DNA of 64,000 nt, taken from the NCBI RefSeq assembly GCF_023055435.1, contig NW_025963815.1:310001-374000 (forward strand), in the 5' to 3' direction. Numbering within the stretch: position 1 is the stretch's first letter; every line of letters begins with the position of its first letter. Both the position numbers and the translations under genes were made by a program. The stretch is from Haliotis rufescens. Taxonomy: Eukaryota. Under the pieces are notes generated by a model. That model did no database searches. It was not told where the DNA came from and saw only the letters and a program-made list of their open reading frames with translations. Positions 3,893 to 62,167 of this stretch are shown here, piece by piece.

Positions 3893-4054
3893 GTGGGTCA
3901 ACGGGCAAAAGTGCTGCAGAGTTCAGAGACTGCAACAATAATTGCAACGGCACCAGTGTCAACGACACATGTGGTTTCTGTGTAGCAGCGTCGGCGGCGG
4001 CCGGCGTCACAGGGAGTCAATACAAGGACTGCAACAACGACTGCTATACGCCAG
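3893..4054 (+). CDS. Gene A exon: Cys-rich repeat (GGSTG..DCNNNCNG...DTCGFC...DCNNDC)
   Basis: ttacag|GT acceptor, CCAG|gtaagt donor, phase 1-1, 162 nt. Confidence 0.85.
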
Positions 4055-7000
4055 GTAAGTGAGAACGAAGCACACGTGTGATGCATATCAGTACAACATG
4101 CAGAAAAACTTCAACCATGTCTCGCGTCCCGTGAACATCCGGGTTACAATTGGTCTTCAGCAACCAGTGCTATTCGTAAGAAGCGACTAACAGGATCGGA
4201 TGGTCAGGCTCCCTGATTTGGTTAATGCATGTCATCGTATCCCAGTTGCGTGAATTGATGCTCATGGTATCAATCACTGGATACACAACAAACAAAATAC
4301 ACAGGTTTGACATGGGTTCAATGTGTGAATACTGTTACTTAGAGGTGGAATTACGCAAGAATTTCGAGTTTCACCGAAATTGCTTTGAGCAATTCCAATT
4401 CACCTATTTAAACAATGAAGGCCAATGAAGTCATAAGTTTATGGTTAAAATGTTGACCAATCGTGCCCACTCGGCATATTCCGCTACCTATACCTCGGAC
4501 AGCAAGTGCGTTTTTTATTGAACGAATTAATATCTTAACATTGACACATCAAGCATTTGTGTAGCACTTGCATGTCACCGTACCCTATGCACTGCAAGAT
4601 CCTTCCGCACGAAGTTCTCACGGGCCGCCGACGTATTGTTGGAAGATTGAAGAGTGTAGCGCTAATTTAAACAACAAAAAAGACATTGTTGTCATGGGGA
4701 TTTCTGTACAATAAGAACAGTCGATTTACATGCATTGTATCGTACATAAAATCAATACATTTAAATTTATATATTGACTTAAACTTGCGAGAACTGCCTT
4801 TTGAATCCAGAGTAAATTCCTGGAAGGCAGAACTTGCTGACTCCGCGTCTCGCCACTACCCGTCAATACATTCCACCGCTCTGTTAAGTGAGTAATGAGT
4901 CTCGCCACTACCCGTCAATACATGCCACCGTTCTGTTAAGTAAGTAGTGAGTCTCGCCACTACCCGTCAATACATGCCACCGTTCTGTTAAGTAAGTAGT
5001 GAGTCTCGCCACAACCCGTCAATACATTCCACCGCTCTGTTAAGTGAGTAGTGAGTCTCGCCACTACCCGTCAATACATTCCACCGCTCTGTTAAGTGAG
5101 TAGTGAGTCTCGCCACTACCCGTCAATACATGCCACCGTTCTGTTAAGTAAGTAGTGAGTCTCGCCACTACCCGTCAATACATGCCACCGTTCTGTTAAG
5201 TAAGTAGTGAGTCTCGCCACTACCCGTCAATACATTCCACCGCTCTGTTAAGTGAGTAGTGAGTCTCGCCACTACCCGTCAATACATTCCACCGCTCTGT
5301 TAAGTGAGTAGTGAGTCTCGCCACTACCCGTCAATACATTCCACCGCTCTGTTAAGTGAGTAGTGAGTCTCGCCACTACCCGTCAATACATTCCACCGCT
5401 CTGTTAAGTGAGTAGTGAGTCTCGCCACTACCCGTCAATACATTCCACCGCTCTGTTAAGTGAGTAGTGAGTCTCGCCACTACCCGTCAATACATTCCAC
5501 CGTTCTGTTAAGTGAGTAGTGAGTCTCGCCACTACCCGTCAATACATTCCACCGTTCTGTTAAGTGAGTAGTGAGTCTCGCCACTACCCGTCAATACATT
5601 CCACCGCTCTGTTAAGTGAGTAGTGAGTCTCGCCACTACCCGTCAATACATTCCACCGCTCTGTTAAGTGAGTAGTGAGTCTCGCCACTACCCGTCAATA
5701 CATTCCACCGCTCTGTTAAGTGAGTAGTGAGTCTCGCCACTACCCGTCAATACATGCCACCGTTCTGTTAAGTAAGTAGTGAGTGTCGCCACTACCCGTC
5801 AATACATTCCACCGTTCTGTTAAGTGAGTAGTGAGTCTCGCCACTACCCGTCAATACATTCCACCGCTCTGTTAAGTGAGTAGTGAGTCTCGCCACTACC
5901 CGTCAATACATTCCACCGCTCTGTTAAGTGAGTAGTGAGTGTCGCCACTACCCGTCAATACATTCCACCGTTCTGTTAAGTGAGTAGTGAGTCTCGCCAC
6001 TACCCGTCAATACATTCCACCGTTCTGTTAAGTGAGTAGTGAGTCTCGCCATCACCCGTCAATACATGCCACCGTTCTGTTAAGTAAGTAGTGAGTCTCG
6101 CCACTACCCGTCAATACATTCCACCCTTCTGTTAAGTGAGTAGTGAGTCTCGCCACTACCCGTCAATACATTCCACCGCTCTGTTAAGTGAGTAGTGAGT
6201 CTCGCCACCACCCGTCAATACATTCCACCGTTCTGTTAAGTGAGTAGTGAGTCTCGCCACCACCCGTCAATACATTCCACATTAAGTGAGTAGTGAGGTG
6301 TGTGTGGTTTAGTCAGCCGTTTATTACTCACGGGAGTTGAATAAGTGAGTATGATTATACGCCGCATCCGTTCACGACATGGAATTCATACTTTGTACCT
6401 ATGTAGGGAAATGAACCCTGGGCTTCTGCACGAACACTCTAACCACTAAGCCACCCCACCACTCCTTAACAAACTAGATACCACATGACACAACTCAATA
6501 AAGATATCTGCTTGAATATCAAATGCTCAAACCCAGTGAAGATCCAGAATAGAATCGGTCTTTAAAAGGCGGCCATGCTTGTCGTAAGAGGTGACTAAAG
6601 GGATCGGGTGGTTAGGCTCGCTGACTTGGTTGATGCATGTCATCGTATCCCAATTGCGTGGATCGATGCTCATGATGTCAATCACTGGATCGTCTGGTCC
6701 AGACTCGACTATTTACAGACCGCCGTCATATAGCTGGAATATTGCTTGGTGGGGCGTTAAACAACAAACAAATCAAAACCAAATGCTCAAATATATGAAA
6801 TCAGGCAATCAGCACTGTAAGCGAGGCAAGTTGCGGTCTTCCTCAGCCTGTAGTGTTCCTGTACACGTCCCTTGACGGTGAGTTTAACACTGCTACCTAT
6901 CCTCCAGGTACACTGGCTCAGATGGCATCCAACAACACGTGCCAGGTGTGTGTCGGCGGCTCGACAGGCAACGCGGCAACAGCGGGAATGGACGCTTGCG

Positions 7001-10000
7001 GCGTCTGTAGCGGCGACAACTCCACCTGTACCGATTGTAGCGGAACTGTGAATGGGCAAGTACCATACATCTAGAATTTGTTCCAATTCCGCTTCTGACC
7101 AGATTCCTTGTATTTTCCACGAAATCTTTCATCCCAAACCTTAAAATTCAGTCGAAACTTGGAATCCCGCTATTGACCAAAACATAATTTACGTACATAT
7201 TTAAGAAATAAACGACTCATGGTCGTTGTTTCTCGTACAATAAAACTCTGCAGGTTTATTCTCCATTCATTATTTTATTGTGCGATAAACAACGACCACG
7301 CGTCGTTTATTTCTTATATTATGTTTCAACATTATGTACAGCATCTTTAAGGATGTTGATACAATGTACAAGCTTCAGAAATATTTACCTTTTTTTTGAT
7401 AATGATGACTCCCTGAATGGAATCCGACTTTGGAAATGTCGGACAAGACCATTTTACGAACAGGTGGGTTAAGTTTGATATATTTCCGCATATTCTTATG
7501 TTCCTTACATCGATTAACTGTACCTTTTCTCCCAATACCGATGGTCACATCTCTCCCACTTGTGGATGCGATCATTCGGCCACTACGTTTATGTGCATAG
7601 CCCAGCCACGTCTATAGTAGTTCATGCTTGTTTAAAATTGTTTGATACAAATTAAATAAGAGTACAGTTGTGTGGCTGTGTAGTGTAAGCTCCTCCTCCT
7701 TCATCACGTGATGAAGGACGAAAGAGTGATAACATGTTTAGACGTCAATAACAGTTCAGTAGACTTGTCCGACATTTTGAATTTAAAGTATGGCGCAGTG
7801 TGTGAACGTACCCAATTAAGCTAAGTCAGTGTATTGGTAGTCATTGGATAATGTCGACAGAACATTGTTAGGTGTTGATTGCATCTGAAGACACCCAACG
7901 TGCGTGATGTCAACCATTAAGACAACAAAACTTAAAACACCGCACGGACTGGCTCGCTGGTGGTGTCAATTACCAGTTCGTCACTCCGTAGCCAAAGCTG
8001 CTGGTCACCACGTGATTGTTTTCGTCCGAGATATTTTCTCAAGCATTATTTACGAAAACACTTTCAATGGCAGACTTCTGTGTGTGCGGTGTTGATGCCA
8101 GACTTCTGTGTGTGCGGTGTTGATGGCAGACTTCTGTGTGTGCGGTGTTGATGGCAGACTTCTGTGTGTGCGGTGTTGATGGCAGACTTCTGTGTGTGCG
8201 GTGTTGATGGCAGTCTTCTGTGTGTGTGGTGTTGATGGCAGGCTTTTGTGTTTGCGGTGTTGATGGCAGACTTCTGTGTGTGCGGTGTTGATGCCAGACT
8301 TCTGTGTGTGCGGTGTTGATGGCAGACTTCTGTGTGTGTGGTGTTGATGGCAGACTTCTGTGTGTGCGGTGTTGATGCCAGACTTCTGTGTGTGCGGTGT
8401 TGATGCCAGACTTCTGTGTGTGCGGTGTTCATATTATGGTGTATGGATTTCCGCAGTTTCGCCGTGCAAAGTCTTTTGCTTCCATTAGGTGTACCAAACC
8501 TAGAAGGGTACGTTCATCAGACAAATCGCAGAGCACTTGTCTTATGAAGGTACCCTCATGGGTTTGCCAATCTTCCCGAGGCAAGAGAGTTAACTGACTT
8601 TAAAAGTCCAGTTTCCACCCTTGCCGAACTAGGCTGGAATTACTGGGCTCGATCGTAGCGCCACCAGAGGCTATTACCAGTTATGTCCCTTCTAAGCCTC
8701 TCCTATGGACCAATTAGGTCCCACCCCGCGCATCACTCGCGTTTGCTTCACACAAAATGGTGGCGCCAAGTCAGGACGATCTGATTGATAATCAAGATCT
8801 ATATTGTGATAAAACGGGTCTTACATCGCGAAATGCATCAAATTCCGTGAGCAACTTGATTAAAAACATGAAAAGATGTGGAAAATATCTGCTGACAACG
8901 AGTTGGCGGTGCAGATGCTTTGCAAATCCTGCAATCGACCGAAATCTGCGCGACAGTTTACGAACCGGATTTCGATTTCGGTGCGCGATTTTGATTGGAC
9001 TATGCATAGACTCGTTAGTCCAGCCAAACTCCATAATACCACTCAGTCCGGCAAGGGTGGAAACTGGACTTTTATAGTCAGTTAACTCTCTTGCCTCGGG
9101 AAGATTGGGTTTGGCATGCAAAATGGACGCAACCAATTTCGTCTAAAATAGCGCAATTGGCCAAGAGTTATCTCCCATAGTGGTACCAGGTTCCGCTGCT
9201 CGTGGCACTTCCTGGTTATAATTCTTCACTTATCAGCACCTTGCCTGTGCTCGTACGTTTCACCAGAGATCTTTGCATATGGCAGGTGATTTACCAAAAT
9301 GTGAAACATTTACATCATGAAACATCCTTTGATAAATTGAAGCAATGTTTATAGCGTTGATGAAGCCGAACTCTCTCACAAGTGAAATTTGTTCATTTTG
9401 CACTTGTTGCGAAAAGTCCGTTCATGTCCTCTTGGTGATGTAAAGCGACACTCACTGGACAAGTAATATAAGTCAGGTTAGACAGATCTCCATTCCTCTG
9501 AATGTTTAATCGAATTCATAACAACTGTGTTGTGGCTGATTTAAATAGTAATATCAGACTTTAAAAAACTGCTGGACTGGTTTGACGTCGTGTTTGACAC
9601 AGACCACTGAAATCGATGAATATTTTTATACTTGTTTTTTTTTCTAAAACCAACATCTTATTTAACAAACCTCAAACCGAAATGATGTTACTACGTTCCT
9701 AGAATACACCAAAGCATAGTATCACGAAATCTAGTGCCCGACACGCAAGACTTACATGAAATATACAAGCATTGCCGTACACTGTTCCAAGTAAGTGATT
9801 GATTTCCTGGTTGTTGATTACAAGAATGTCGCTGTATTAATAATTAAATGTGTTCCTTCTCGTTGTCCAGTAGGTAACCGGCAGCCATCTCTGTTTGTGT
9901 AGTTCTGTATCGGGGACAGCTTTGGGGCTATCTTCATTCAGGGAAATTGTAACATCGCATGTAATGTGATGACAGGGTTGCTCCGGGCAGCGGCAGTTTT

Positions 10001-13000
10001 TCTAACTTAGATGTTGTGTTTATTGCCTGGCATTTTTGCTGTGGCTTGGAAGTAGAAGAAATGCCTGGACTGATGTAATAACATCCAAGTTTAATCTACA
10101 TCTTGATTGTCATTATTGTGATCTGCTGTTATCACTTATCTCTTCATTATGCCGAACTGTATACACTGATCATTATGCCGAACTGTACACACTGATCATT
10201 ATGCCGAACTGGACACTGATCATTATGCCGAACTGGACACACTGATCATTATGCTGAATTCTTACACACTTGTTAATATGCCGAACTGTATACACTGATC
10301 ATTATGCCGAACTGTACACACTGATCATCATGCCGAACTGGATACACTGATCATTATGCCGAACTATACACACTGATCATTATGCCGAACTAGAAACACT
10401 GATCATTATGCCAAACTGTACACACTGATCATTATGCCGAACTGGATACACTGATCATTATGCCGAACTGTACACACTGATCATTATGCCGAACTGGACA
10501 CTGATCATTATGCCGAACTGGACACACTGATCATTATGCTGAATTCTTACACACTTGTTAATATGCCGAACTGTATACACTGATCATTATGCCGAACTGT
10601 ACACACTGATCATTATGCCGAACTGGACACTGATCATTATGCCGAACTGGACACACTGATCATTATGCTGAATTCTTACACACTTGTTAATATGCCGAAC
10701 TGTATACACTGATCATTATGCCGAACTGTACACACTGATCATCATGCCGAACTGGATACACTGATCATTATGCCGAACTAGAAACACTGATCATTATGCC
10801 GAACTAGAAACACTGATCATTATGCCGAACTGTACACACTGATCATCATGCCGAACTGGATACACTGATCATTATGCCGAACTGTACACACTGATCATTA
10901 TGCCGAACTGTACACACTGATCATTATGCCGAACTGTACACACTGATCATTATGCCGAACTAGAAACACTGATCATCATGCCGAACTGTACACACTGATC
11001 ATTATGCCGAACTGGATACACTGATCATTATGCCGAACTGTACACACTGATCATTATGCCGAACTGGATACACTGATCATTATGCCGAACTGTACACACT
11101 GATCATTATGCCGAACTAGAAACACTGATCATTATGCCGAACTGTACACGCTGATCATTATGCCGAACTGTACACACTGATCATTATGCCGAACTGGATA
11201 CACTGATCATTATGCCGAACTGTACACACTGATCATTATGCCGAACTGTACACACTGATCATTATGCCGAACTGTACACACTGATCATTATGCCGAACTG
11301 TACACGCTGATCATTATGCCGAACTGTACACGCTGATCATTATGCCGAACTGTACACGCTGATCATTATGCCGAACTAGAAACACTGATCATTATGCCGA
11401 ACTGTACACACTGATCATCATGCCGAACTGGATACACTGATCATTATGCCGAACTGTACACACTGATCATTATGCCGAACTGTACACACTGATCATTATG
11501 CCGAACTGAACACACTGATCATTATGCCGAACTAGAAACACTGATCATTATGCCGAACTAGAAACACTGATCATTATGCCGAACTGTACACACTGATCAT
11601 TATGCCGAACTGTACACACTGATCATTATGCCGAACTGTACACACTGATCATTATGCCGAACTAGAAACACTGATCATCATGCCGAACTGTACACACTGA
11701 TCATTATGCCGAACTGGATACACTGATCATTATGCCGAACTGTACACACTGATCATTATGCCGAACTAGAAACACTGATCATTATGCCGAACTAGAAACA
11801 CTGATCATTATGCCGAACTAGAAACACTGATCATTATGCCGAACTGTACACACTGATCATTATGCCGAACTGTACACACTGATCATTATGCCGAACTAGA
11901 AACACTGATCATTATGCCGAACTGTACACACTGATCATTATGCCGAACTGGATACACTGATCATTATGCCGAACTGTACACACTGATCATTATGCCGAAC
12001 TGGATACACTGATCATCATGCCGAACTGGATACACTGATCATTATGCCGAACTATACGCACTGATCATTATGCCGAACTGGAAACACTGATCATTATGCC
12101 GAACTGTACACACTGATCATTATGCCGAACTAGAAACACTGATCATTATGCCGAACTGTACACACTGATCATTATGCCGAACTAGAAACACTGATCATTA
12201 TGCCGAACTGTACACACTGATCATTATGCCGAACTGTACACACTGATCATTATGCCGAACTGTACACACTGATCATTAAGCCGAACTGGACACACCGTAC
12301 ATTTTACCGAATTTTGTTTATAATTTTACGTATTATGCGTATGGAACGCATTTTATACCGTTTTAAACTCCGTTTTGATCGGACCTCATGTGTACATGTA
12401 TCTCTGTATAGAGCACTCGTGCTGAACTGTGTCTAGAGCGGATCTTATGCCGAATTCTGTATAGAGCGCTCGTACTTATGATATGTATATCATCACATGT
12501 ATGACGTGCTTATGATATTTGCAGCACCATAGGTATGGTGTACTAATGATATATGCAGCCCCATACGTATGACGTACTTATGATATATGCAGCACCACAG
12601 TATGACGTTCTTATGATATATGCAGCACCATAGGTATGGTGTACTAATGATATATGCAGCACCATAGTATGACGTACTTATGATATATGCAGCACCACAG
12701 TATGACGTTCTTATGATATATGCAGCACCATAGGTATGGTGTACTAATGATATATGCAGCCCCATACGTATGACGTACTTATGATATATGCAGCACCACA
12801 GTATGACGTTCTTATGATATGTGCAGCACCATAGGTATGGTGTACTAATGCTATATGCAGCACCATAGTTTGACGTACTTATGATATATGCAGCACCATA
12901 GTATGACGTACTTATGATATATGCAGCACCATAGTTTGACGTACTTATGATATATGCAGCACCATAGTATGACGTACTTATGATATATGCAGCACCATAG

Positions 13001-38379: not shown

Positions 38380-38430
<51 letters not shown>

Positions 38431-47258: not shown

Positions 47259-47635
47259 TCGTGAAGATCGGGGTTAGTATTGGTCTTCATGCCTTGCTAT
47301 GAGAGGCAACTATGGATGCCTTAAGAGTTGACTAACGGGATCGGGAGGTCAGACTCACTGACTTGGTTGATGCATGTCATCGTATCCCAATTGTGTAGAT
47401 CGATGTTTATTATGTCAATGACTGGATTGTCCGATCCAGATTTGATTATTTACAATATTTATCATAATGCTGGAATATTGCTGTGTGCGCCCTTAAACAA
47501 CAAACAAACAAAAATGTCTAGTTTTGCCTTTGCAAGTATTTGTTCCCCTTCCCGTTGTTCTATAGATGACGTAATTTTACTTTAACTTTTCCGACTTGGT
47601 AGGCCGATCCATGGAAGCGACCGTTCTTCTTGCAT
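47259..47635 (+). pseudogene. Inverted, diverged copy of gene B intron end plus exon start (GRSMEATVLL)
   Basis: tagttttgcctttgcaag...ttttccgacttggtag|gccgatccatggaagcgaccgttcttcttg matches the reverse complement of about 56524-56632; a SINE lies upstream in the same relative position. Confidence 0.75.
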
Positions 47636-49138: not shown

Positions 49139-49289
49139 TTAGTAGATGTTTCTCTTGAGCCCGTCGCCTGAACCGGGACGTTTGTCGCTAGGGGAGTCTA
49201 CTAGTCGATTTGGTGACTCGTTACTCATGTGAACTCTGGACTGGGACCTAGAGTTCCTTCTGGAGGTGGCGTTCATTCTTGAGTTGGCC
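49139..49289 (-). CDS. Gene B terminal exon: Ser/Arg-rich cytoplasmic tail ending KRNIY*
   Basis: ttacag|G acceptor, phase 2 compatible, TAA at 49139-49141. Confidence 0.78.
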
Positions 49290-52200: not shown

Positions 52201-55200
52201 TGCTTCAGTGTATACTGATTTATGTACCGGCCTACGTGTGTAGGTCATTGCTTCAGTGTATACTGATTTATGTACCGGTCTACGTGTGTAGGTCATTGCT
52301 TCAGTGTCTACTGATTTATGTACCGGTCTACGTGTGTAGGTCATTGCTTCAGTGTCTACTGATTTATGTACCGGTCTACGTGTGTAGGTCATTGCTTCAG
52401 TGTCTACTGATTTATGTACCGGTCTACGTGTGTAGGTCATTGCTTCAGTGTATACTGATTTATGAACCGGACTACGTGTGCAGGTCATTGCTTCAGTGTA
52501 TACTGATTTATGTACCGGTCTACGTGTGTAGGTCATTGCTTCAGTGTATACTGATTTATGTACCGGTCTAAGTGTGTAGGTCATTGCTTCAGTGTATACT
52601 GATTTATGTTCCGGCCTTCGTGTGTAGGTCATTGCTTCAGTGTATAGTGATTTATGTACCGGTCAACATGTGTAGGTCATTGCTTCAGTGTATACTGATT
52701 TATGTACCGGTCAACATGTGTAGGTCATTGCTTCAGTGTATACTGATTTATGTACCGGTCTACGTGTGTAGGTCATTGCTTCAGTGTCTACTGATTTATG
52801 TACCGGTCTACGTGTGTAGGTCATTGCTTCAGTGTATACTGATATTTGTACCGGTATACGTGTGTAGGTCATTGCTTTAGTGTATACTGATTTATGTACC
52901 GGTCATACGCCACGACTTACCTTGATTTGCATGTATAACGGTGTACGTGGTGAAATGAGATGCTCTGCACTCCACGTTTGTGCCGGTCTGGACTGCCGTT
53001 GTCACGCCCTCCGTTGACCAGGTGCTTGTGGCGGCGTCCCAGAACACACATAGCGCCACCTGGCCCTGGTTAGCCTGGTCGCTGTTCAGTTTCATCGAGA
53101 TGGACGCCGGCGTCTCAAGCCCTGCCACTTGCTTCTGTCCATCTGGAAGTACAGAGGTGAGGTTTTATGCCGCATTAGCACTGTTGAGCCACATAGTCAC
53201 GAGAAAGTGATATCGAAATGATCAGCAAATGATACATGATTTATTACATACGTCAGTGTGAAATATTGAGTTTTCTGAAATAGAGAAAAGGGATATTTTC
53301 ATTTTAGTGAACATAACACTTTATATTTTACTGCAATGAACATAACACTTGATATTTCACTGCAGTAAACAAGACAATTTGACGGAACTATTGTCATACC
53401 AGAGTTACCTTCACGCAAATGTCTTCCTTTATCATACGTGTCTGGCCCGTACTGTTCACTTCCTTCTTATGTTAGTTCCACATTGACAAGGCCAAATAAT
53501 GACAGATGGTCATTTATGAAGTTTATGTTTCGTTATAGACTGTAATTGTTTCATGAAACTCGTCAATCGAGACTGTTCTTCACGCAAAGAGCCATTTTTG
53601 TTACTTGACCAGCATGTATTCTTTCGCTTTCAACAGCGTTCTCGTGGACTTCAAGAATATTTTGTTGAAGTTTGTTTTTTATATAATCATATCTAAATGT
53701 ATGATAAAGACCCTAATTATTTCTTGTTATATTTGCTAATTTTAAGATTTTGCAAACACGGAACTACATTTCAAGTCGCAAATACAGGAGCTAGACTAAG
53801 TTAAACGTCCCTGTGTGTTAGGTAGGCAGAATTTACGTTTCAACGTTTTACTTTTGGAATGAAATTATTTAATTTTTCCGGTAGACAACTACACAAAAAG
53901 TATAATATAAATAGGATATTCCACGTGTCTCGTGAAAAATCATCTTTCTCTCATCTTGTAACGAGGTAGTAGTACGAGCGTCTACGCCACTCGTGAAAAA
54001 TATCCTTTCCCCTTTCCCTCCTTTCCTCAATTTAGTGAGTGACCGAGTGAACAGTGATTAGTCTTATCGCTGTCAGTTGTCTAAGAGTGGGAGGGTACGC
54101 TGGTACGTCACACGATGGCAGGCATGGTGCTGACAGACCAAGGATCCTAATTAAATCTGGGAGTCGAACGTGTGATCGACCTGCAGGACTAAGGGACGCA
54201 ACTCTGCACATGGACCTGTGGCGCCAACTACTACTACTACTGCCACTACTACTTTCACTACAACTACCACTGCTACGAATTCTACTCCTACTACTATTGC
54301 AGCTGCTACTAGAACTACTACTACTACTGCTAATGATAATACTACTGCTGCTGAACGGGATCTGATGGTCAGGCTCGCTGATTTGGTTGATGCATGTCAT
54401 CGATCTCAATGCCGTGGATCGATGCTCATGATGTTAATTATTGGATTGTCTGGTCCAGACTAGATTATTAACAGACTGCCGTCATATAGCTTGACTATTT
54501 CTGAGTGCGGTGTTAAACAACAAAGAAACAAACAAAACAAACTACTGCTGCTACTACTACCACAACTTCTACTAAAACCACTACTACTACTACTGCTACT
54601 AAAACTTCTACCACTGCTGCTGCTACTACCTCTACTACTTTTTCCCATCGAAAAAAGCCCGATGTCATGTTTTTAATCAAGGTGCCGAAGTGCTGTGATG
54701 CACCTCGCGAGGTTAAGACCCGTTTTATTACTATATAGATCTCGATTATCGATCAGATCGTCATGACTCGTCGCCGCCATTCTGTGTGATGCAAATGGAA
54801 TCTGATTGGTCAATAGGAGGTAAATAGAAAGGGACATAAATCGTTATAGTCACCGGTTGCGCTACGGTCGAGCCACGAATGCCAACCAAAGTTGGATCGC
54901 CGTCATATAGCTGGAATATATCTGAGAGCGGCATTAAAGAAATAAATAAGCGGCTATTGCTTCCTCTGCTGGTATTGCTACGGCTGCACCTATTTATACT
55001 AATGCTGCTGCTGCTGCTGCTGCTGTTGCTGCTACTCACTTGTGGCCGGGTCTAAGAAGGAGACTTCAATGATTGGCGCCATAGTAGAAGACGTATCGGT
55101 GATGGCTGCAGGTTTGGTCTTGAAGGTTGTCACCTTAATGACCACGTTCTTGTAGCCAAGCCTGCAAACAAACACGTCATATCAATGTCCAAGCTGATTT

Positions 55201-58200
55201 ACTAAACTGATCTGACTGAAAGACGTATCTGACTGGAAAACATGACGTGGAATTATCATCAGGGCACGTCCTCAAACCCCGCTGGCACCACATGTTTTCG
55301 ACAAAATTTAAAATCATTCCCTTGTCAAAATAAAAAAAATAGTTCCGTCTGTTTCAAGTGTAAATTAATTGAAATATTGGTGCAAGATAATGTATATTTG
55401 ACGAATACCCTGAAAGAAATGGGGCGTTTAAACAATAGAATGGCGTCACAAATATGTTTTAATATCAAGACTGGGTATTTAGCTTGGCATACGGAAGAGA
55501 AGGATTTTGCTGTCAGTCCATATACTAACAAAACGCCCACGCGGGTGGTTTCGAATGTACGTTTCTCTGTTAAAACCCTTGAATAAGACATGTTGATACC
55601 TGACACCTAATCCGACTTTACCATTACGTATCCGAATTATTTGTTGAGCAGGTCAAAAGGCAAAACTAACCAACGGCCACATGAGTTACTGGACACACCA
55701 CGCACTTGCTGAATATCAGTACTATTTCATCATGATAAACGGGCAAACCGTCCAGTAATTACTAAAATGACTTTTTCAAAATGACTGCCGAGGTGGGCAA
55801 ATTTAAAGATGGATCCAAACCATGTAATTTGTTGGCTTTTTTTCAGTATAACAATTACTTACAATATATGACACGTCATATGATACATCCTGAGTGCCAA
55901 ATGTGATAGTTTCAATATGGCTGCCACGACGGCCATATTTAAAATTTGAATAAAATTGTAGAAAACTCTTTGGAGACCTTTGCAAGGTTTCAGAGAAAAC
56001 GGACGGATGACGTGTCATGACTGGAAATAACTCTCACTTACTTCGATCTGACACTTTCACCGAATTTTATCTTCAAATCGTTGTTGCTTCCATCTTTGAC
56101 CGTCAAGTCATCGCCGGGTATATCATTGACCACGCTCACACGAGATGCAGTCAGGTTATAAGTAGCAGAGTTTCCGTATTCAACCCCAGTGGACTCGGCA
56201 TCATCAACTTTGGCCTCTAAGGCCGCAATCACATCACTAGAAGCACCAGCAGTCTTAGCATTGGCGAGCCAGGTGTTCACGCCCTCAAGGTATCGTTCCG
56301 GGACTTTGACGTTATTGTTGATGAAGTAGTCGATGGTGTTCATTATATGAGAAGCGAGAGTAGCAATTTCCTCACTCGTGAAAGCCTGGGGTGGGATTGC
56401 CGTCAAGGCGTCGAGGAAAGTGCTTGCGGAAGCATCGTTCATGGTCCTCTTGGCAGCTATGTCATTGACCAGGGGAATAAGCAGAGATGGGAGGGTGCTC
56501 TCGCCTGTTTTTCCGTACAACGTCACAAGAAGAACTGCGGCTTCCATGGACCGGCCTACAAAGGCGGAAAAATTAAACAAGTCAAGCATTGAATAAAGTG
56601 AAGGGGAATGGCTGCTTGCAACGGCAAAACTATAAACAAGTATTAAAAAAAGTTTGTATGTTTGTTTGTTGTTTAACGCCACACAGCTGTATGACGGCGA
56701 TCTGTAAATAATCGAATATGTACCAGACAATCCATTGGTTGACATCATGAGCATCGATACATGTAATTGGGATCGGTGACCTGCATCAACTAAGTCAGTG
56801 AGCCTGACCACCCGATCCCGTTAGTCGCTTCTAACGACAAGCGTACTCGCCTTTTATGACAAGCATGGGTTGTTGAAGACATATTCTTCCCCGGATCTTC
56901 AAGGGTCAGTGTAAATTATTACATAAATGGAATTATTCGGGACCAGTATTTTTCGCTATCCTCGATTATCCAATGTATTATGTTTCCATGCTATTATGAT
57001 AAATACTCTGGGGTGAGTGAGTTGGGTTTAGCGATGCTTCGAACAGTATTCAAGTTATATCACGGCGTATCGGCTGTTTTTTGGAGGAAATGATGCATGT
57101 CTTGTAAGTTTACCACTTTGATGAAACCCACGGGTATGGTGCGAACAAACCTAGAAACATTATCTGGGCGAACCGGACTCAAACTCATCATTATTAGGTT
57201 TCAGACGTGCCCAAGGGACGCAACTCTGCACAGAGAGTTGCGGTCACCCTTGCATCCTAAATACCATGGAAATTTGGGAGCATTGGTTTGAGCCTTTTTG
57301 AGCCTCGGATTTCCATGACTCTTAAAACAGCCATCCAATCAAAGAGGGCGCTAAGTTAGAGACAAAAGCGATAGAGGTGGTGAAATCTACGGCGGCGAAT
57401 GTGTCTCGCATGCTTAGATATCTTGTCATATAAAATATTATTTCATAAGCTGTCAACATGATATTACATTAGCATGTTTGAGAACTATTTATCAAAACGA
57501 TATTTCACTTATAAAATAAATCACACGTAAAGAACGGCATTGTGTGAAACTCTCTACCGAGATATAGTTACTTTACTTATACGAATAAATATAATCGTAT
57601 TTTTATCTTATTGGTGGAAAATTGATAGAAACAATTATTAATATAAATAGATATAATAGTATTGTTTTCTTATTGGTGCAACACTGACAGATACAAGTAT
57701 TTATACGAATAGATAAAATCGTATTTTTGTCTAATTGGTGAAAGACTGACATATACAATTGTTTATACGAATAGATAAAATCGTATTTTTGTGCAACACT
57801 GACAGATACAATTATTATTAAGGAAAAACGCATAGATCTATTCTCTCCTTCTACACACCATGTTTTTAACCAGCTTCCTCTACATATCTGCTGAATATCC
57901 ATCGTGCACCAGATAGAACAACAGTCTTTCGCTGTCCCCAAATTTAAGTAGGAAAAATATTTGTTTTTCGAAATGTCATCATCCTGTTCACCCTGTGAAT
58001 AAAAACTGAAGTCGTCCTACACATCCCTGTCATGGAATCCCTGGTGTTTCTAGGTGTTTTTTTCTGGCTGACCATCAGGTCACAATTCCTTACTTTGATT
58101 ATTGAGAAGATCGATCTCTTTCTTTATTGCCGTGACCAGCGTGTCCGTACTCCCGGGGTCGTTCACAGTTGGGACCACGCAGCTCAATGTCCTGCACAGG

Positions 58201-61200
58201 CCGTTCTCGCCTCCCACACACACCTGGACATCAATCAATTATATATGGCTACTGACTGACCGAAACTCTTCAGCAAACTTCATCATCCGTAGTCTGCCAC
58301 TCTACACTTTTGCTAGCGGGTGCGCTCTTCAGCCCGTGTAATATTATCTCCCTTGACAGCACTTCTGCTCTTCAGACGTATACAGGTTAAACGAGCTGTA
58401 TTACAATACAGTAAACTACGTTTATAACGAACTGACGGATATAACGAACTTTTTTTGTCCCGGACATTTGCTGTATATATGTTGTAAATATGCCTTTAAC
58501 AAAATACGGTTATAACAAACTAAAATCAGTGGTCCCTTTGAGGTCGTTGTAGCCGTAGTTTACTGTACATATGTATTTCGTCCAATAGAAAAGTCGTATC
58601 GTGTAAACTTCACATTGAAACCACATGATTCTGTTAAAACTAACTGTCATTGGAAAAGTCCTTTGAAGTTTCATATGTTGGAGGTTGCCTATCAGTAGAC
58701 ACAAGCATATAAACACAAACAATGTGTCTAGTTGTGTATGTATTGAATTAAGACAAACATACACGGGTGGGTGAGTATGGTTTTACGCCGCTTTTTATCA
58801 CGGGAAGGGTCACCAGATATGGGTTTCACACATTGTACCCATATGGGAAATGGAAACCGGGTCTTCGGCGTGATGAGCGAACGCTTTATCCACTAGGCTA
58901 CCCGACCGCCACTTATATGCAGAAACACATGATATATAAGATGTGAATAATTTTCTGTTTGCGAATAGCAACACGATATTATTCAGCAAACTAATATAAA
59001 ACAACGGATCTTTTACAAATCACAATGATGACACCAGGTGCTTGTGAATCTAACACGCCTGAACTGTCCTACGAATCGTCCTCACCGCGAGTTAAAGTCA
59101 AGGTTACTGTACAAGAAGCTGTACATCAAGTTCTCGTCATCACCACGAGTCAAGGCCAAGGTCACTGTACAAGAAGATGTACATCAAGTTCTCGTCATCA
59201 CCACGAGTCAAGGTCAAGGTCACTGTACAAGAAGCTGTACATCAAGTTCTCGTCATCACCACGAGTCAAGGTCAAGGTCACTGTACAAGAAGCTGTACAA
59301 CATGTTCTAGTCCTCACTACGAGTCAAGGCCAAGGCCACTGTACAGGCAGCTGACGAACATGAACCAGGCCGCAAAGATGCAGATATAGTAACTGTTGTA
59401 TTTTTTTCAATTAGTTGAAATTGTGAAATGTAACCACGAATTCCTCACCTCAACATGGAAGGTGTTTCCAGCAGAGCTGTAGGAGCGAGGCCCGACAACC
59501 CGGAAGTCCCCAGTGCTCTGCCTCTGAGACAAAGCCCTGAATTGTCCAGGAGAGGTCTGGACTAGGAGCATGTAAGTCATCCCTCCCGGACCGTCCACCT
59601 TCCTAGTCGTGATTGATATCTGCAACAATAAATCGATTTCTATGAACAGTGAAACCAAACCAATCGTGAGCATGCTGTCTCTGCAACAATAAATCGATTT
59701 CTAACCAAACCAATCGTGAGCATGCTGTCTCTCATGTGACCTTTCGAGACCATAACCTTTAACTACCACGCAGTGATATAACTGTAATACTGTTCCATAT
59801 AACTCACTAAACAGTATCTGACATACCAACTGATTACACACATCAAACTATTTCCGTAATATTTAACGGAACTGAAAATTGTATAGTTATCGGGTTGAAC
59901 TGACAGGTGACCCCTACGTCAAAATATAAGACTATATGAATACATCACCGAAAATCAGTGATGGCACCAGGTGCCTGCGACAAGGGCAAGACGTCCTACC
60001 ATACCGGTGGCACCTGCTTCCCACACAACTTGCATAAACATTAAGTGTTTGTTTGTTACACAGCAGTACTCTTGCCATACGATGACGGCCTGTGAACACA
60101 GGAGTGGGTGAGTGATTTGGATTTAACGCCGCTTTTAACAGTATTCCAGTTCACACGGCGTGTCAGCTTAATGAGGGAGGAAAGCCCAAAGTGATGCACG
60201 TTCCAGACGTTTACCCCATCGGTGAAACCCAAGAGCGCGGGTATGGTGCTGACAAACCTAGAAACATAATCGGGGCAAACAGGGATTCGAACCTATAATC
60301 ACAGGTTTCTGGCACCCCCCAGGACGCAACTCTGCATAGCAAAGTGCGGCGCCTTAGACGACATGACCACCCGTGCCCTCAAACAACAAAACGAGGAGAT
60401 GCCAACCTACCTTGTTCAGCTCGGTGTAAGACGAAGGACATGCCAGTACCCCTCCAGACAATCCCTTCTTCACGCTCACAGTAATCGTTGTCTTGGTTTG
60501 ACCGCCATTAACATCCGTAATGGTAGCCTGTAGATTGTACATATTGCCGCCTTCGACAATGCCTGGAAATACATAACTGAACTGGAGAACCACCCTACAC
60601 AAGGCTCCTCAGAACCAGGTGATGAACCGTTATCAACCACCCCTGTCTGCCATTTGTTATTCTGACGGTGGGGGCTGGGGGTAGGGGGTTCTGGGATTTT
60701 ATCGAAAAATACATTGTCCACGAAAATTCTTGAAAAGAAATATTGCTGCAGACTTTGGAAAAAAACAGTTGCCTGCCACAAAAATGACAATATGGCAAGG
60801 TGACTTTCTTTGATAAAATTCAGGCTCAAAGGTTTAAAGAAGAAAATATCTGGTTTTGTAGCTGTAACTGAAAAAATAGATATCTAATCACAAAACAAAA
60901 ATCCCAGCTCCCCTTCCACCCCCAGCCCTCAACTCAAACCCCCTTCCCCCAAGAATAATGATCAGTCCAAAGCTATCCCGGCAAAGTCGGCCTCATTAAC
61001 ACAGGTAGATGTATAAAAACCATCCTCTGCATAATTCCAATTTACGTTAATAAAAAGGTACAATTATCAAATCCACGTATGGACCCTCTAAATTTAAAAC
61101 ACTGTGTGTTTCCCTCAACATTTAATTTGTATATTATATGGTGGGTACTGTATGTATTATGTCCTTACTGAGATTCATCGATTATTCATATACTATATGA

Positions 61201-62167
61201 TCAAACAGTCTGGCATTTTCTTTCAGTTTGAAATACCTTACTATGTGACACCTACCTTTTCCGATTACAAGGAACATCTTATATACATTGTCAGGCAGGG
61301 CATCAGTGTACTGGTCCGCTATGGCCACGTCCAAGTCCAGGGCCATGACAGCTGAACACAAAGTAAGGACACATGATAATTTCTGATATAGCACACGTAT
61401 AAAAACTGACGATTTCCCACTCTACCCAATACCTCTGACCAATTAATCACACCATTTCGAGCTCATTCCATCCTTCCCCACCACCTTGTACCATATTCCA
61501 CCCCTTCTTACGACATCCCACCCCTTCTTACGACATCCCACCCCTTCTTACGACATCCCACCCCTTCTTACGACATCCCACCCCTTCTTACGACATCCCA
61601 CCCCTTCTGTTCTCGCCCCATCCCATCTCACTCTGTCCTACCATGTCCTACCCCGTCCTACCCCGTCTCACCCTGCCTTACCCTATCTCACCCCATCTTA
61701 CTCCGTCCCACCCCGTCTCACCATGCCCTACCCCGTATTACCCCATCCCACCCCTTCTTATAGCGTCCCACCTTCGTACACCGCCCCACCACGCTTTAAC
61801 CCATCCAACCCCCACCTCACCCCTTCTTACCCTGTCTAGTATAAGCTGGTCATACCCCTTCCTACCCCGTCCAACCCCTTCTTACGCCACCCCACACCGC
61901 CCTACCCCGTCCCAAGCCGTTTTACACCGTACTACCCCAAAACCTGTGACGCCCCATCTCATCCAATCCCTCCTCACGACGTCCTATTTCCTACCCTTCC
62001 CTACCCATACCGACCCACAAGAACCCTATACAGCATGAACTGTATCTACCTCCTCGTGTCTGGCTGTTCCACACCGTGTCCCTGATGGCCACTGAGGATG
62101 TGCAGGTGACCACAAGCAACGCCCGGTCTCCTGGCCGCACAATGTGTCGATTATTTGACGCAAAACA
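49139..62167 (-). CDS. Gene B (5'-partial, 10 exons in window): paralogous REJ-like/GAIN-GPS single-pass receptor
   Basis: Ten GT-AG exons sum to 1812 nt (604 codons including TAA); intron phases match gene A's last nine exons; GPS and TM motifs present. Confidence 0.88.
50062..50197 (-). CDS. Gene B exon: TM helix (GMIVGIVLGIIVLMIVIILLIVFIVY-RCTRNK)
   Basis: tcacag|CC acceptor, CCAG|gtaagc donor, 136 nt; absent from the ORF track. Confidence 0.87.
50300..51967. repeat. 25-bp minisatellite with a higher-order duplication of about 499 bp
   Basis: agaagacaatcaagtatgtgatgcc; near-identical ORFs at 51287 and 51786. Confidence 0.92.
52055..52904. repeat. 48-bp minisatellite
   Basis: tgtgtaggtcattgcttcagtgtatactgatttatgtaccggtctacg. 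Confidence 0.95.
52921..53142 (-). CDS. Gene B exon: GPS motif (CVFWD...WSTEGV...ECRASHF|TTY)
   Basis: ttccag|AT acceptor, CAAG|gtaagt donor, 222 nt. Confidence 0.9.
54226..55035. repeat. Interrupted CTA/CTG triplet tracts around SINE fragments
   Basis: Tracts near 54226-54352, 54540-54638 and 55000-55035. Confidence 0.8.
55040..55161 (-). CDS. Gene B exon (LGYKNVVIKV...IIEVSFLDPAT)
   Basis: ttgcag|G acceptor, ACAA|gtgagt donor, 122 nt, phase 2-1. Confidence 0.84.
56042..56555 (-). CDS. Gene B exon: helical GAIN-A-like region (RSMEAAVLL...IKFGESVRS)
   Basis: ttgtag|GC acceptor, CGAA|gtaagt donor, 514 nt, phase 1-2; lies within ORF 56038-56811. Confidence 0.87.
58094..58223 (-). CDS. Gene B exon (VCVGGENGLCRTL...IDLLNNQ)
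   Basis: gtccag|GTG acceptor, CAAA|gtaagg donor, 130 nt. Confidence 0.83.
58407..58567. mobile_element. Tc1/pogo-type MITE
   Basis: ta-cagtaaactacg...cgtagtttactg-ta inverted termini. Confidence 0.65.
59078..59345. repeat. 58-bp tandem repeat (4-5 copies)
   Basis: catcaagttctcgtcatcaccacgagtcaaggtcaaggtcactgtacaagaagctgta. Confidence 0.9.
59449..59619 (-). CDS. Gene B exon (ISITTRKVDGPGGMTY...GNTFHVE)
   Basis: ttgcag|ATA acceptor, GAG|gtgagg donor, 171 nt, phase 0-0. Confidence 0.85.
60411..60562 (-). CDS. Gene B exon (IVEGGNMYNLQATITD...CPSSYTELNK)
   Basis: ttccag|GC acceptor, AAG|gtaggt donor, 152 nt. Confidence 0.85.
61256..61351 (-). CDS. Gene B exon (VMALDLDVAIADQY...FLVIGK)
   Basis: gttcag|CT acceptor, AAAG|gtaggt donor, 96 nt. 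Confidence 0.8.
61470..62030. repeat. C-rich tract with 20-bp repeat ccccttcttacgacatccca
   Basis: Perfect copies at 61501-61608, degenerate downstream. Confidence 0.85.
62050..62167 (-). CDS. Gene B exon (CFASNNRHIVRPGDRALLVVTC...VWNSQTRG)
   Basis: ttacag|TGT acceptor, GGAG|gtagat donor on the minus strand, 118 nt, phase 0-1. Confidence 0.75.

What the first reader, a model, noticed from the sequence alone, without database searches (positions are those of the whole stretch)
3893..62167. Tail-to-tail pair of polycystin-1/REJ-like GAIN-GPS receptors that end after a single TM helix
Seen: two convergent multi-exon genes with stops about 8.5 kb apart. Their last exons correspond one-to-one in phase and length (121/118, 105/96, 152/152, 186/171, 130/130, 577/514, 158/122, 213/222 nt), yet the proteins are strongly diverged. 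Each has a GPS motif, one TM helix and a stop. Established: GAIN/GPS domains normally precede a 7TM (adhesion GPCRs) or an 11TM region with a PLAT domain (polycystin-1 family); short REJ forms are known from sea urchin sperm. Inference: this is a locally duplicated family of autoproteolytic, sheddable adhesion or sensing receptors with no signalling module of their own. They may work with a separate channel or GPCR partner, or with each other.
Basis: partly seen in the sequence, partly recalled or inferred. Interest (0 to 1): 0.82.

Follow-up and report, generated by a model that had tools for sequence, protein, structure and literature searches.

The report
Single-pass REJ–GAIN membrane proteins, abalone-like
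Two neighbouring, tail-to-tail genes of a gastropod (abalone-like) genome encode very large cell-surface proteins that carry the polycystin/egg-jelly-receptor "REJ" module and a self-cleaving-type GAIN/GPS domain but then stop after one membrane helix, a short form already known from sea-urchin sperm, so this is a solid new example rather than a new kind of system.

Summary
Gene A (+) stops at 40651-40653 and gene B (-) at 49141-49139, 8.5 kb apart. For A, five exons and the terminal exon are seen in spliced RNA contigs from four runs, four studies and two species. These contigs run unspliced through the stop into the 3'UTR. Both GPS exons pass Pfam GPS. A carries REJ. The Haliotis rubra relative of B carries REJ. 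The 624-kb contig has no PLAT or PKD-channel exon. A full-length Patella homologue has the same signal–mucin–REJ–GPS–1TM plan. Fold and complex predictions fit a GAIN domain whose first post-cleavage strand stays embedded.

Both genes run out of the window. A probably starts with a 1,869-codon Ser/Pro/Met mucin exon. B carries 56 near-identical EGF exons. B has one more exon, a 49-residue tail, after the TM exon. A third paralogue lies about 100 kb away. B has HF|T instead of HL|T, and the family keeps two of the four GPS cysteines.

The architecture REJ+GPS+1TM is that of sea-urchin SpREJ1, so this is a new member of a known kind. Cleavage, shedding and partners remain inferred. B's expression was not tested.

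The parts
3893..4054 (+). Gene A exon (162 nt), a Cys-rich module. It is the first gene A exon inside the window; earlier exons lie upstream of the window.
   Evidence: Family-HMM and tblastn hits to the Patella homologue. Splice and phase model.
6908..31028 (+). Gene A, 12 modelled exons: 6908-7055, 18918-19020, 19540-19684, 20319-20450, 22327-22488, 23893-24090, 24873-25031, 26323-26568, 27222-27417, 27793-27938, 28755-28871, 30904-31028. They encode Cys-rich, Ig-like/PKD-like and N-terminal REJ parts.
   Evidence: Collinear family-HMM hits. Phase-consistent splice model. Not checked by RNA here.
31546..31755 (+). Gene A exon (210 nt) with the REJ-domain signal.
   Evidence: Pfam REJ PF02010, 40.1 bits, E 2.3e-10. 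36.8 bits in the six-frame search of the genome.
32842..35031 (+). Gene A exons of 121 nt (32842-32962), 105 nt (33997-34101) and 152 nt (34880-35031).
   Evidence: The 152-nt exon matches the 152-nt exon of B at E 8e-6.
35562..35747 (+). Gene A exon of 186 nt. Its donor is GC (AAG|GCAAGT).
   Evidence: Spliced RNA contigs in 4 runs. Boundary set.
36416..36545 (+). Gene A exon of 130 nt.
37576..38152 (+). Gene A exon of 577 nt: helical GAIN subdomain A plus the first strands of subdomain B.
   Evidence: RNA contigs. The AF2 model has six helices followed by strands, pLDDT 73.8. Aligns to B's 514-nt exon at E 1e-7 to 2e-11.
38963..39120 (+). Gene A exon of 158 nt: GAIN subdomain B strands.
   Evidence: 42-44% identical to the Patella and Nucella homologues.
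39718..39930 (+). Gene A exon of 213 nt with the GPS motif. H-L|T is at 39900-39908, with the predicted scissile bond between 39905 and 39906.
   Evidence: RNA contigs. Pfam GPS 32.5 bits. Profile hits to solved adhesion-GPCR GAIN domains. Translation.
40472..41334 (+). Gene A terminal exon. It holds the rest of the 21-residue stalk, the TM helix (40507-40590), a 20-residue tail, the stop at 40651-40653 and the 3'UTR. AATAAA is at 41319. The organism B contig ends at 41334. Organism A contigs run on past 41499.
   Evidence: Contigs are unspliced from 40472 through the stop in all 4 runs..
49139..49289 (-). Gene B predicted last exon (151 nt): a 49-residue Ser/Arg-rich cytoplasmic tail and the stop TAA (49141-49139).
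   Evidence: Acceptor ..ttattacag|G, in phase with the TM exon. No RNA evidence.
50062..50197 (-). Gene B TM exon (136 nt). The helix is at 50174-50097. The donor is CAG|GTAAGC. If the intron is retained, a stop follows at once.
   Evidence: Aligns to the TM region of A.
52921..53142 (-). Gene B exon of 222 nt with the GPS motif. H-F|T is at 52957-52949.
   Evidence: Pfam GPS 36.9 bits..
55040..56555 (-). Gene B exons of 514 nt (56555-56042, GAIN subdomain A) and 122 nt (55161-55040).
   Evidence: 72-73% identical to H. rubra XP_046551913.
58094..62167 (-). Gene B exons of 118 nt (62167-62050), 96 nt (61351-61256), 152 nt (60562-60411), 171 nt (59619-59449) and 130 nt (58223-58094): the C-terminal part of the REJ region.
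   Evidence: These exons map to the REJ-domain span of the H. rubra protein.
40654..49138 (.). Space between the two stop codons. It holds the 3'UTRs and a 34-bp minisatellite (44866-46417). It has no PLAT, PKD-channel, REJ or GPS exon.

Best explanation
SHOWN.
- The window holds the 3' two-thirds of gene A and the 3' part of gene B.
- They are two old paralogues, 20-25% identical, with at least 14 exons of matching phase.
- They belong to a gastropod family of type-I, single-pass members of the PKD1/REJ superfamily.
- The shared core is Ig-like/PKD-like modules, a REJ domain, a GAIN-like domain ending in a GPS motif, a stalk of 19-21 residues, one TM helix and a short tail.
- The gene A mRNA ends in the TM exon.
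- No PLAT, 11-TM or channel part exists on the contig.

INFERRED FROM SEQUENCE OUTSIDE THE WINDOW.
- Gene A begins with a signal peptide and a Ser/Pro/Met-rich mucin-like exon of about 1,870 codons. That would make it a membrane mucin of about 3,300 residues.
- Gene B carries 56 near-identical calcium-binding-type EGF exons.

INFERRED MECHANISM.
- In the ER the GAIN domain of A cuts itself at HL|T.
- The huge ectodomain then stays held non-covalently, through the embedded strand TGFSGF..., on a 68-residue membrane stub.
- Pulling force or ligand binding can release it.
- In this it works like the SEA module of membrane mucins and like the cleaved polycystin/REJ proteins.
- Any signal must pass through a partner, for example a PKD2-type channel or an 11-TM REJ protein, as proposed for SpREJ1.
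- B (HF|T) may be cleaved poorly or not at all.
For: Gene structure and transcript end:
- Spliced contigs in 4 runs, 4 studies and 2 species.
- Exon boundaries and frame.

Domains:
- REJ in A.
- GPS in both genes.
- PDB profile search with the two GPS exons: the ten best hits (E up to 0.005) are all adhesion-GPCR chains, best ADGRG3 at E 3.3e-6.

Absence of a multi-TM part:
- No PLAT or PKD_channel hit on C37, while both are found next to other REJ loci of the same genome.

Homologues:
- Only 9 proteins reach E<=0.001 among 1.84e9 representatives. Eight are family members or fragments; the named ones are all gastropod (Patella, Haliotis, Nucella) and four short ones (P0001, P0003-P0005) are unnamed. 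The ninth is a bacterial false positive.
- The full-length Patella caerulea protein has a signal peptide, a mucin-like region, REJ at 135.8 bits, GPS, HL|T, one TM and a 17-residue tail.

Fold:
- AF2 of the 577-nt exon of A gives six helices then strands.
- For the AF2 model of the Nucella homologue, the six best of 350,542 PDB chains by Foldseek are all GAIN-domain structures, E 2.5e-3 to 5.9e-3.
- VIA-align gives Z 9.0-9.8 over 181-223 residues to BAI3, BAI2 and Gpr126 GAIN.

Embedded strand:
- Complex prediction of Patella 1270-1562 with 1563-1628 scored 0.66, best control 0.00.
- That mark was reached by 51 of 78 solved complexes and 2 of 108 mismatched pairs.
- The runs agree in at least 74% of contacts, and the partner pLDDT is at least 58.
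- Residues 1563-1573 lie between strands 1484-1494 and 1526-1533.

Literature:
- A GAIN ectodomain on a foreign single TM helix self-cleaves and reaches the surface (PMC12488864).
- SpREJ1 has REJ, GPS and 1 TM (PMC1934368).

Mucin exon:
- Open frame, composition and signal-like start.
- In-phase donor at -12484.
- The X5 contig has about 690 nt more than the modelled exons. That matches the non-repetitive 3' end of this exon.
Against: - No cleavage was observed.
- The family keeps only two of the four conserved GPS cysteines, one disulfide instead of two. This could weaken the strained turn needed for autoproteolysis.
- B has Phe at P1.
- Fold matches are weak in absolute terms: E>0.001, TM-scores 0.15-0.28, model pLDDT 59.9.
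- For the A exon alone, GAIN hits tie with generic helical repeats.
- The complex pass may reflect the model's memory of solved GAIN domains. It was run on the Patella homologue, not on the window's proteins.
- Gene B has no RNA evidence here. Its REJ signal exon by exon stays below the cut-off, 14.2 bits.
- The link of the mucin exon to gene A and of the EGF array to gene B is inferred, not seen in reads.
- Tissue of expression is unknown.
Confidence: 0.72

Rival explanations
1. The GAIN-like domain is a relic that no longer cuts itself. The proteins are intact single-chain barrier or adhesion glycoproteins (a membrane mucin and an EGF-repeat adhesin), and the GAIN region is only a rigid membrane-proximal stalk.
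For: - Only 2 of the 4 GPS cysteines are kept, and B and the third paralogue have HF|T.
- About a third of adhesion GPCRs are not cleaved. PMC12488864 states that two-thirds are cleavable.
- The GAIN-A region evolves fast: 25-30% identity between gastropod orders.
Against: - A and both Patella proteins keep the exact H-L-T triad and the hydrophobic strand after it.
- The strand is predicted to be embedded as in cleaved GAIN domains.
- A single TM anchor is enough for GAIN cleavage in experiments (PMC12488864).
Confidence: 0.25
2. They are gamete-recognition receptors like sea-urchin SpREJ1. On this reading they sit on sperm, bind egg-coat glycans through the ectodomain, and trigger the acrosome reaction through a PKD2-type channel.
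For: - The core architecture is the same as SpREJ1: EGF, REJ, GPS, 1 TM and a short tail (PMC1934368).
- B differs strongly from its H. rubra relative, 58-87% per exon.
- The GAIN-A exon of A has a raised non-synonymous share between two species: 11 of 16 changed codons in a partial list.
Against: - No tissue information is available.
- Gene A exons are present at full share in 12 likely-RNA runs of 3 studies of the species. That is not what a strictly testis-limited gene would suggest.
- A giant mucin domain fits an epithelial surface better.
- Overall omega for A is about 0.4, which gives no sign of positive selection (partial list of differences).
- No C-type lectin domain was seen.
Confidence: 0.15
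3. The one-TM ends are artefacts. On this reading the genes are truncated isoforms or decayed remnants of ordinary 11-TM PKD1-like genes.
For: GPS normally precedes 7 or 11 TM helices. Contigs can miss rare isoforms (tool note).
Against: - The terminal exon of A with its stop, 3'UTR and poly(A) signal is seen in four runs and two species.
- No PLAT or channel exon lies on the 624-kb contig.
- The frames are intact.
- The same ending occurs in the Patella full-length proteins.
Confidence: 0.03

Closest known systems
Sea-urchin SpREJ1 (suREJ1), the one-TM member of the PKD1/REJ family (Moy et al. 1996; Gunaratne et al. 2007, PMC1934368)
   Same: - A large glycosylated ectodomain with a REJ domain.
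- A GPS just before the first and only TM helix, then a very short tail.
- No PLAT and no channel-like part.
- An EGF module at the N-terminus, as in gene B.
- It sits beside 11-TM REJ paralogues in the same genome. These are also present here on other contigs.
   Different: - No C-type lectin domains were found here.
- A carries a mucin-like region of about 1,650-1,870 residues and Cys-rich CGVCGGD-type modules.
- B carries 56 EGF exons.
- Only one GPS disulfide is kept.
- Orthology to SpREJ1 was not tested, and independent loss of the multi-TM part is as likely.
- Function and tissue are unknown.
Polycystin-1 / PKD1-like proteins (11 TM)
   Same: REJ domain followed by GAIN/GPS with HL|T. 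Cleavage leaves the two halves associated.
   Different: There is no PLAT domain, no helices TM2-11 and no C-terminal coiled coil. The C-terminal fragment here is 68 residues in A and about 106 in B.
Adhesion GPCRs and their natural one-TM isoforms (Drosophila Cirl 1TM; bioRxiv 10.1101/2023.01.11.521585; review PMC13197933)
   Same: - A GAIN domain with GPS directly before the membrane.
- The best sequence and fold matches are adhesion-GPCR GAIN domains.
- A GAIN ectodomain on one helix exists naturally in Cirl and works with a 7TM partner.
   Different: - Here the one-TM form is the gene's own end, not an intron-retention isoform of a 7TM gene.
- There is no 7TM exon and no HormR domain.
- A REJ domain lies upstream, which adhesion GPCRs lack.
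Membrane-tethered mucins with a SEA domain (MUC1, MUC3/12/13/17)
   Same: - This is how gene A probably works.
- Signal peptide, a very long Ser/Pro-rich domain, an autoproteolytic module next to the membrane, one TM and a short tail.
- The two chains are held non-covalently and separable by force.
   Different: - The module is GAIN/GPS, not SEA. Pfam finds no SEA in the Patella protein.
- A REJ domain is present.
- Gene A is therefore not a member of that family.

Membership tests
PKD1/REJ family (defined by a REJ domain; PMC1934368) | REJ domain (Pfam PF02010) | tested here: met
   - Gene A exon 31546-31755: 40.1 bits against a cut-off of 25, and 36.8 bits in the genome scan.
- Patella homologue: 135.8 bits over profile positions 6-443.
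- Gene B, exon by exon: only 14.2 bits, for an exon just outside the window.
- The spliced H. rubra relative of B scores 87.7 bits.
- So the feature is met for A. For B it is met only through the relative.
PKD1/REJ family | GPS motif upstream of the first TM helix | tested here: met
   PF01825 scores 32.5 bits (A) and 36.9 bits (B) against a cut-off of 22.5. The TM helix follows 21 and 19 residues after the predicted cut.
Polycystin-1-type (11-TM) members | PLAT domain after TM1, and TM2-11 with or without a PKD channel-like region | tested here: not met
   - The gene A mRNA ends in the TM exon.
- There is no PF01477 or PF08016 match on contig C37, although both are found beside other REJ loci.
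GAIN domain (Arac et al. 2012, PMC3321182) | Fold of about 320 residues: helical subdomain A, a beta-sandwich subdomain B, and the GPS as its last strands | tested here: met
   - The 577-nt exon of A folds into six helices plus strands.
- For the model of the Nucella homologue, the six best Foldseek hits are all GAIN domains, E 2.5e-3 to 5.9e-3.
- VIA-align gives Z 9.0-9.8 over 181-223 residues.
- Sequence profile hits reach 10 adhesion-GPCR chains at E<=0.005.
- Support is moderate. The models have low to medium confidence, and the A exon alone is not specific.
GAIN domain | Cleavage triad His-Leu|Thr/Ser | tested here: met
   A has DHL|TGF and Patella has NHL|TSF. B has SHF|TTY and the third paralogue has SHF|TEF, which are non-canonical at P1. 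So the feature is met for A but not strictly for B.
GAIN domain | Two conserved disulfides (four Cys) in the GPS motif | tested here: not met
   Only two Cys are present, C30 and C57 of the GPS exon of A. The 'GC' and one Cys of 'CxC' are replaced in A, B and Patella.
GAIN domain | Autoproteolysis, with the fragments staying associated | not testable with these tools
   There is only a prediction. The split Patella domain scored ipSAE 0.66 against a best control of 0.00. That mark was reached by 51 of 78 solved complexes and 2 of 108 mismatched pairs. Runs agree in at least 74% of contacts, and partner pLDDT is at least 58.
Adhesion GPCR | Class B2 7TM domain after the GAIN domain | tested here: not met
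   There is one TM helix and then a stop. In B the exon after the TM exon encodes a hydrophilic tail.
SEA-type membrane mucins | SEA domain next to the membrane | tested here: not met
   No SEA family appears in the Pfam scan of the Patella full-length protein or of A's last exons. The likeness is functional only.

The most novel reading that the evidence does not exclude
Gene A and its Patella and Nucella relatives are a so far undescribed class of membrane mucins. In them a REJ-GAIN module, not a SEA domain, forms the force-breakable link between a giant glycosylated ectodomain and a tiny membrane stub. After the ectodomain is shed, the exposed stalk (TGFSGF...) could act on a partner receptor or channel in trans, as a tethered agonist does in adhesion GPCRs and polycystin-1. 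B and C would be EGF-array versions in which cleavage has been tuned down (HF|T).
Probability: 0.3. Interest if true: 0.6.

Novelty: new member of a known kind. Interest (0 to 1): 0.4.

Why it matters
These genes are natural cases of a GAIN/GPS domain with nothing behind it but one helix. They allow a clean question: what does GAIN autoproteolysis do by itself (anchoring, force-dependent shedding, exposure of the stalk) without a 7TM or 11-TM receiver? They extend the short REJ form from echinoderms to gastropods. They also show REJ-GAIN combined with a mucin domain and with an extreme, recently homogenised EGF-exon array. For abalone biology they are candidates for surface-barrier or gamete-surface proteins. 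None of this overturns current views.

Tried and rejected
- The three word-index protein searches gave little, each for its own reason. The 190-residue exon query could only reach proteins of 105-332 residues, so its blank says nothing of longer relatives. The two region queries scored only the 8,000 candidates sharing most words. The exon query found only one genomic ORF at 93%. The Patella region query found only the two Patella proteins. The H. rubra region query found only itself.
- A profile of all homologues against PDB sequences was swamped by EGF hits. It was replaced by a profile of the two GPS exons.
- Foldseek on the model of the 577-nt exon of A alone gave only generic helical proteins. 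The wide VIA-align search placed Gpr126 and BAI3 GAIN at ranks 13-14 (Z 8.7 and 8.6), tied with helical repeats. This is inconclusive.
- ESM Atlas gave only sub-threshold leads (0.89 GPS clusters).
- Family tree of the GAIN-A region: A+P0001 and B+H. rubra are clear pairs, but the deeper forks are weak (72/79), so the age of the A/B split is not fixed.
- No TM exon was found for the third paralogue in 8.9 kb downstream of its GPS-like exon.
- The dN/dS estimate rests on a partial list of differences and is only rough.
- Rejected: the reading as truncated 11-TM genes (see rivals), and P0008, a bacterial PASTA-repeat protein, as a relative.
Exons were searched one by one by reference. Local scripts concatenated exon coordinates only to check frame and phase and to classify differences.
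- Read laying and the look-up of sequencing runs allow one call each, so gene B's transcripts were not examined.

Full report
SETTING

The window is G000:C37:310001-374000 of a 1.33-Gb genome in 615 contigs. It has no N runs. The nearest named proteins come from gastropods: Haliotis rubra, Patella caerulea and P. vulgata, and Nucella lapillus. The genome is therefore abalone-like. The species itself was not identified.

1. THE OBSERVATION

Gene A lies on the + strand.
- Twelve likely-RNA runs of the same species, from three studies, hold about a quarter of the sampled words of 35500-40700. That is the exonic share of the stretch.
- I laid four runs on 35500-41499: X1, X5 and X8 of organism A, and X13 of a second species, together covering four studies. 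Each gave one long contig in six collinear pieces, with zero depth in the introns.
- Moved to consensus splice sites, the pieces are exons 35562-35747 (186 nt), 36416-36545 (130), 37576-38152 (577), 38963-39120 (158) and 39718-39930 (213), plus a terminal exon that starts at 40472.
- The 35748-36415 intron has a GC-AG donor (AAG|GCAAGT).
- The terminal piece runs without a joint through the stop codon (40651-40653) into the 3'UTR.
- The contig of the second species ends at 41334, 15 nt after an AATAAA. Contigs of the first species continue past the end of the laid stretch.
- A profile built from four homologues gives a collinear series of further exons back to 3893.

Gene B lies on the - strand.
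- The same procedure gives exons of 118, 96, 152, 171, 130, 514, 122 and 222 nt with the same phases as A.
- The match in phase continues for at least six more exons upstream: 210/180, 125/128, 117/117, 146/161, 196/193 and 246/153 nt.
- The exons align at 58-87% to a spliced RefSeq protein of H. rubra.
- A and B are only 20-25% identical. Their collinear matches run from E 2e-11 down to weak ones at 0.02.
- The two stops are 8,485 nt apart.

B's TM exon (50197-50062) ends in the strong donor CAG|GTAAGC. It is predicted to join a last exon (49289-49139) that encodes 49 more residues. If the intron is retained, the frame stops at once.

2. WHAT THE PROTEINS ARE

Pfam.
- GPS is found in both GPS exons: 32.5 and 36.9 bits against a cut-off of 22.5.
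- REJ is found in gene A's 210-nt exon at 40.1 bits.
- B's exons taken singly stay below the REJ cut-off, the best being 14.2 bits. The spliced H. rubra protein scores 87.7 bits.

Homologues.
- A profile of the A and B GAIN-A exons was searched against 1.84 billion representative proteins. It found nine proteins at E<=0.001.
- One of the nine is a bacterial false positive.
- The other eight are family members or fragments. The named ones are all gastropod proteins; four short ones (P0001, P0003-P0005) carry no name or species.
- Patella caerulea KAK6191655 (1,628 aa) is full length. It has a signal peptide, a Ser/Pro/Met mucin-like region, Cys-rich modules, REJ at 135.8 bits, GPS, NHL|TSF, one TM helix (1578-1611) and a 17-residue tail.
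- Its P. vulgata orthologue is auto-named 'mucin-4'.

GAIN evidence.
- A profile of the two GPS exons of the window hits ten solved adhesion-GPCR chains at E<=0.005. ADGRG3 GAIN is best at E 3.3e-6. The alignments extend upstream of the 40-residue motif.
- AlphaFold2 of A's 577-nt exon gives six helices followed by strands, pLDDT 73.8. This is the layout of GAIN subdomain A leading into subdomain B. Fold searches with it alone are not specific.
- The model of the 439-residue Nucella protein has pLDDT 59.9. Its six best Foldseek hits among 350,542 chains are GAIN domains of latrophilin-1/3, BAI3, BAI2 and GPR110, E 2.5e-3 to 5.9e-3.
- For the same model VIA-align gives Z 9.0-9.8 over 181-223 residues to BAI3, BAI2 and Gpr126.
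- The Patella domain was split at HL|T and folded as two chains.
  - Score 0.66, best control 0.00.
  - That mark was reached by 51 of 78 solved complexes and 2 of 108 mismatched pairs.
  - The runs agree in at least 74% of contacts, and the partner pLDDT is at least 58.
  - Residues 1563-1573 lie between strands 1484-1494 and 1526-1533. This is the position of the embedded 'Stachel' strand of GAIN domains.
  - The pass may owe something to the model's memory of solved GAIN structures. It shows likeness, not binding.

Differences from the canon.
- The family keeps only two of the four GPS cysteines.
- B has HF|T.

3. NO MULTI-TM PART

- Besides the RNA evidence for A, six-frame searches of the whole genome find PLAT and PKD_channel exons next to REJ exons on contigs C13, C113, C1 and C335 (ordinary 11-TM forms). 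None is found on C37.
- The only GPS hits on C37 are the two in the window.
- The 8.5 kb between the stops holds the 3'UTRs and a minisatellite.

- Gene A continues upstream of the window, with exons at window coordinates -1218..-1024 and -5974..-5843.
- Further upstream is a 1,925-codon open frame (C37:291838-297612) with 42% Ser, 12% Pro and 12% Met. It begins with a signal-like MDIAVTLVFIVLV. It has a strong in-phase donor, AAG|GTGAGT, at -12484.
- The 8,902-nt contig of run X5 has about 690 nt more than the modelled exons. That equals the non-repetitive 3' end of this frame.
- So A is probably a membrane mucin of about 3,300 residues. This is an inference.
- Gene B continues for at least 70 kb beyond the window. 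It has further REJ/Ig-like exons and 56 EGF exons of 117 nt (phase 1-1) in units of about 985 bp. Fifty-one full units have a median identity of 98.3% (C37:389110-443494).
- A third paralogue lies on the - strand at C37:466-495 kb. It has a GAIN-A exon (E 3e-12) and a degenerate GPS exon (..SHFTEF). No TM exon was found for it.

5. HOW IT MOST LIKELY WORKS

Shown: type-I topology by sequence, REJ, a GAIN-like domain with GPS, one TM and short tails. The tails are 20 residues in A and 61 residues, Ser/Arg-rich with RRNS, in B.

Inferred for A:
- The protein cuts itself at HL|T in the ER.
- The ectodomain stays held by the embedded strand on a 68-residue stub.
- It is released by force or by a ligand.
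- Signalling, if any, goes through a partner.

Published experiments show that a GAIN ectodomain on a foreign single TM helix cleaves itself and reaches the cell surface (PMC12488864). Drosophila Cirl makes natural one-TM isoforms that work with the 7TM form (PMC13197933; bioRxiv 10.1101/2023.01.11.521585). B and the third paralogue may be cleaved poorly.

6. COMPARISON AND NOVELTY

- Sea-urchin SpREJ1 has an EGF module, lectin domains, REJ, GPS and one TM. It 'lacked this large TM domain' (PMC1934368).
- New here: the lineage (gastropods), the mucin and EGF-array N-termini, the reduced GPS cysteine set and the three-gene cluster.
- The genes are members of the REJ family in the sense of that paper. 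They are not polycystin-1-type, not adhesion GPCRs and not SEA mucins. A probably works like a SEA mucin.

7. LIMITS

Exons were searched singly by reference.
- Local scripts concatenated exons only for frame checks and for a rough count of changes between the two species. That count was 15 non-synonymous and 13 synonymous codons, omega about 0.4, from a partial list.
- Tissue of expression is unknown, because run records are coded.

VERDICT

This is a new member of a known kind, of moderate interest.

Noticed in passing
Upstream of the window: G000:C37:291838-297612 (+), window coordinates -18163..-12389 (loci L008/L007): A 1,925-codon open frame with 42% Ser, 12% Pro and 12% Met, made of repeats like SSSSMPPMSSSSPAA. 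It has a signal-peptide-like start and an in-phase donor at -12484. It is probably the first coding exon of gene A, which would make A a membrane mucin of about 3,300 residues.
   Followed up: partly
Downstream of the window: G000:C37:389110-443494 (-), loci L002-L006 and L009: 56 EGF-like exons of 117 nt (symmetric phase 1-1) in a tandem array of units of about 985 bp. 51 full units have a median identity of 98.3%, and 37 exons are identical at protein level. The array forms the 5' part of gene B. Whether all the exons are spliced in is unknown.
   Followed up: partly
G000:C37:about 466134-495219 (-), loci L012-L015: A third paralogue of the family. It gives collinear family-HMM hits, including a GAIN-A exon (466700-466134, E 3e-12) and a degenerate GPS exon (465031-464852, ..SHFTEF, first Cys lost). 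No TM exon was found in the 8.9 kb downstream.
   Followed up: partly
G000:C37:446000-456100 (-), loci L010/L011: Several diverse EGF-like exons and one Calx-beta-like exon lie between the EGF array and the third paralogue. Which gene they belong to is not settled.
   Followed up: no
window 44866-46417, 50301-51966 and 52053-52909: Three minisatellites: 34 bp x 47 between the genes, and 25 bp x 67 and 48 bp x 18 filling most of gene B's intron between the GPS and TM exons. They create long spurious open frames on both strands.
   Followed up: yes
window 35748-36415, and the predicted donor at 7056: A GC-AG intron (AAG|GCAAGT) confirmed by RNA contigs in four runs. A second GC donor (TGG|GCAAGT) is predicted after the 6908-7055 exon.
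   Followed up: partly
window 40654-41499 and beyond: Two 3' ends for gene A. The contig of the second species stops at 41334, after AATAAA at 41319. Contigs of the window's species continue 2-3 kb past 41499, and further AATAAA/ATTAAA signals lie at 43618 and 43698.
   Followed up: no
window, for example 32179-32455, 33198-33450, 34340-34610, 48700-48900, 57087-57240 and 60090-60325: Copies of one interspersed repeat, in both orientations, lie in introns of both genes and between them. They account for most raw similarity between the two strands.
   Followed up: no
Other contigs of the genome: C13:1.65 Mb and 11.65-11.80 Mb, C113:13.78-15.14 Mb, C1:53.26-53.33 Mb, C335:3.33-3.38 Mb: Ordinary PKD1/REJ-type loci with REJ, PLAT and PKD-channel exons together. 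Several have very long single-exon REJ frames (about 970-1,760 codons). They are possible partners or ancestors of the short forms.
   Followed up: no
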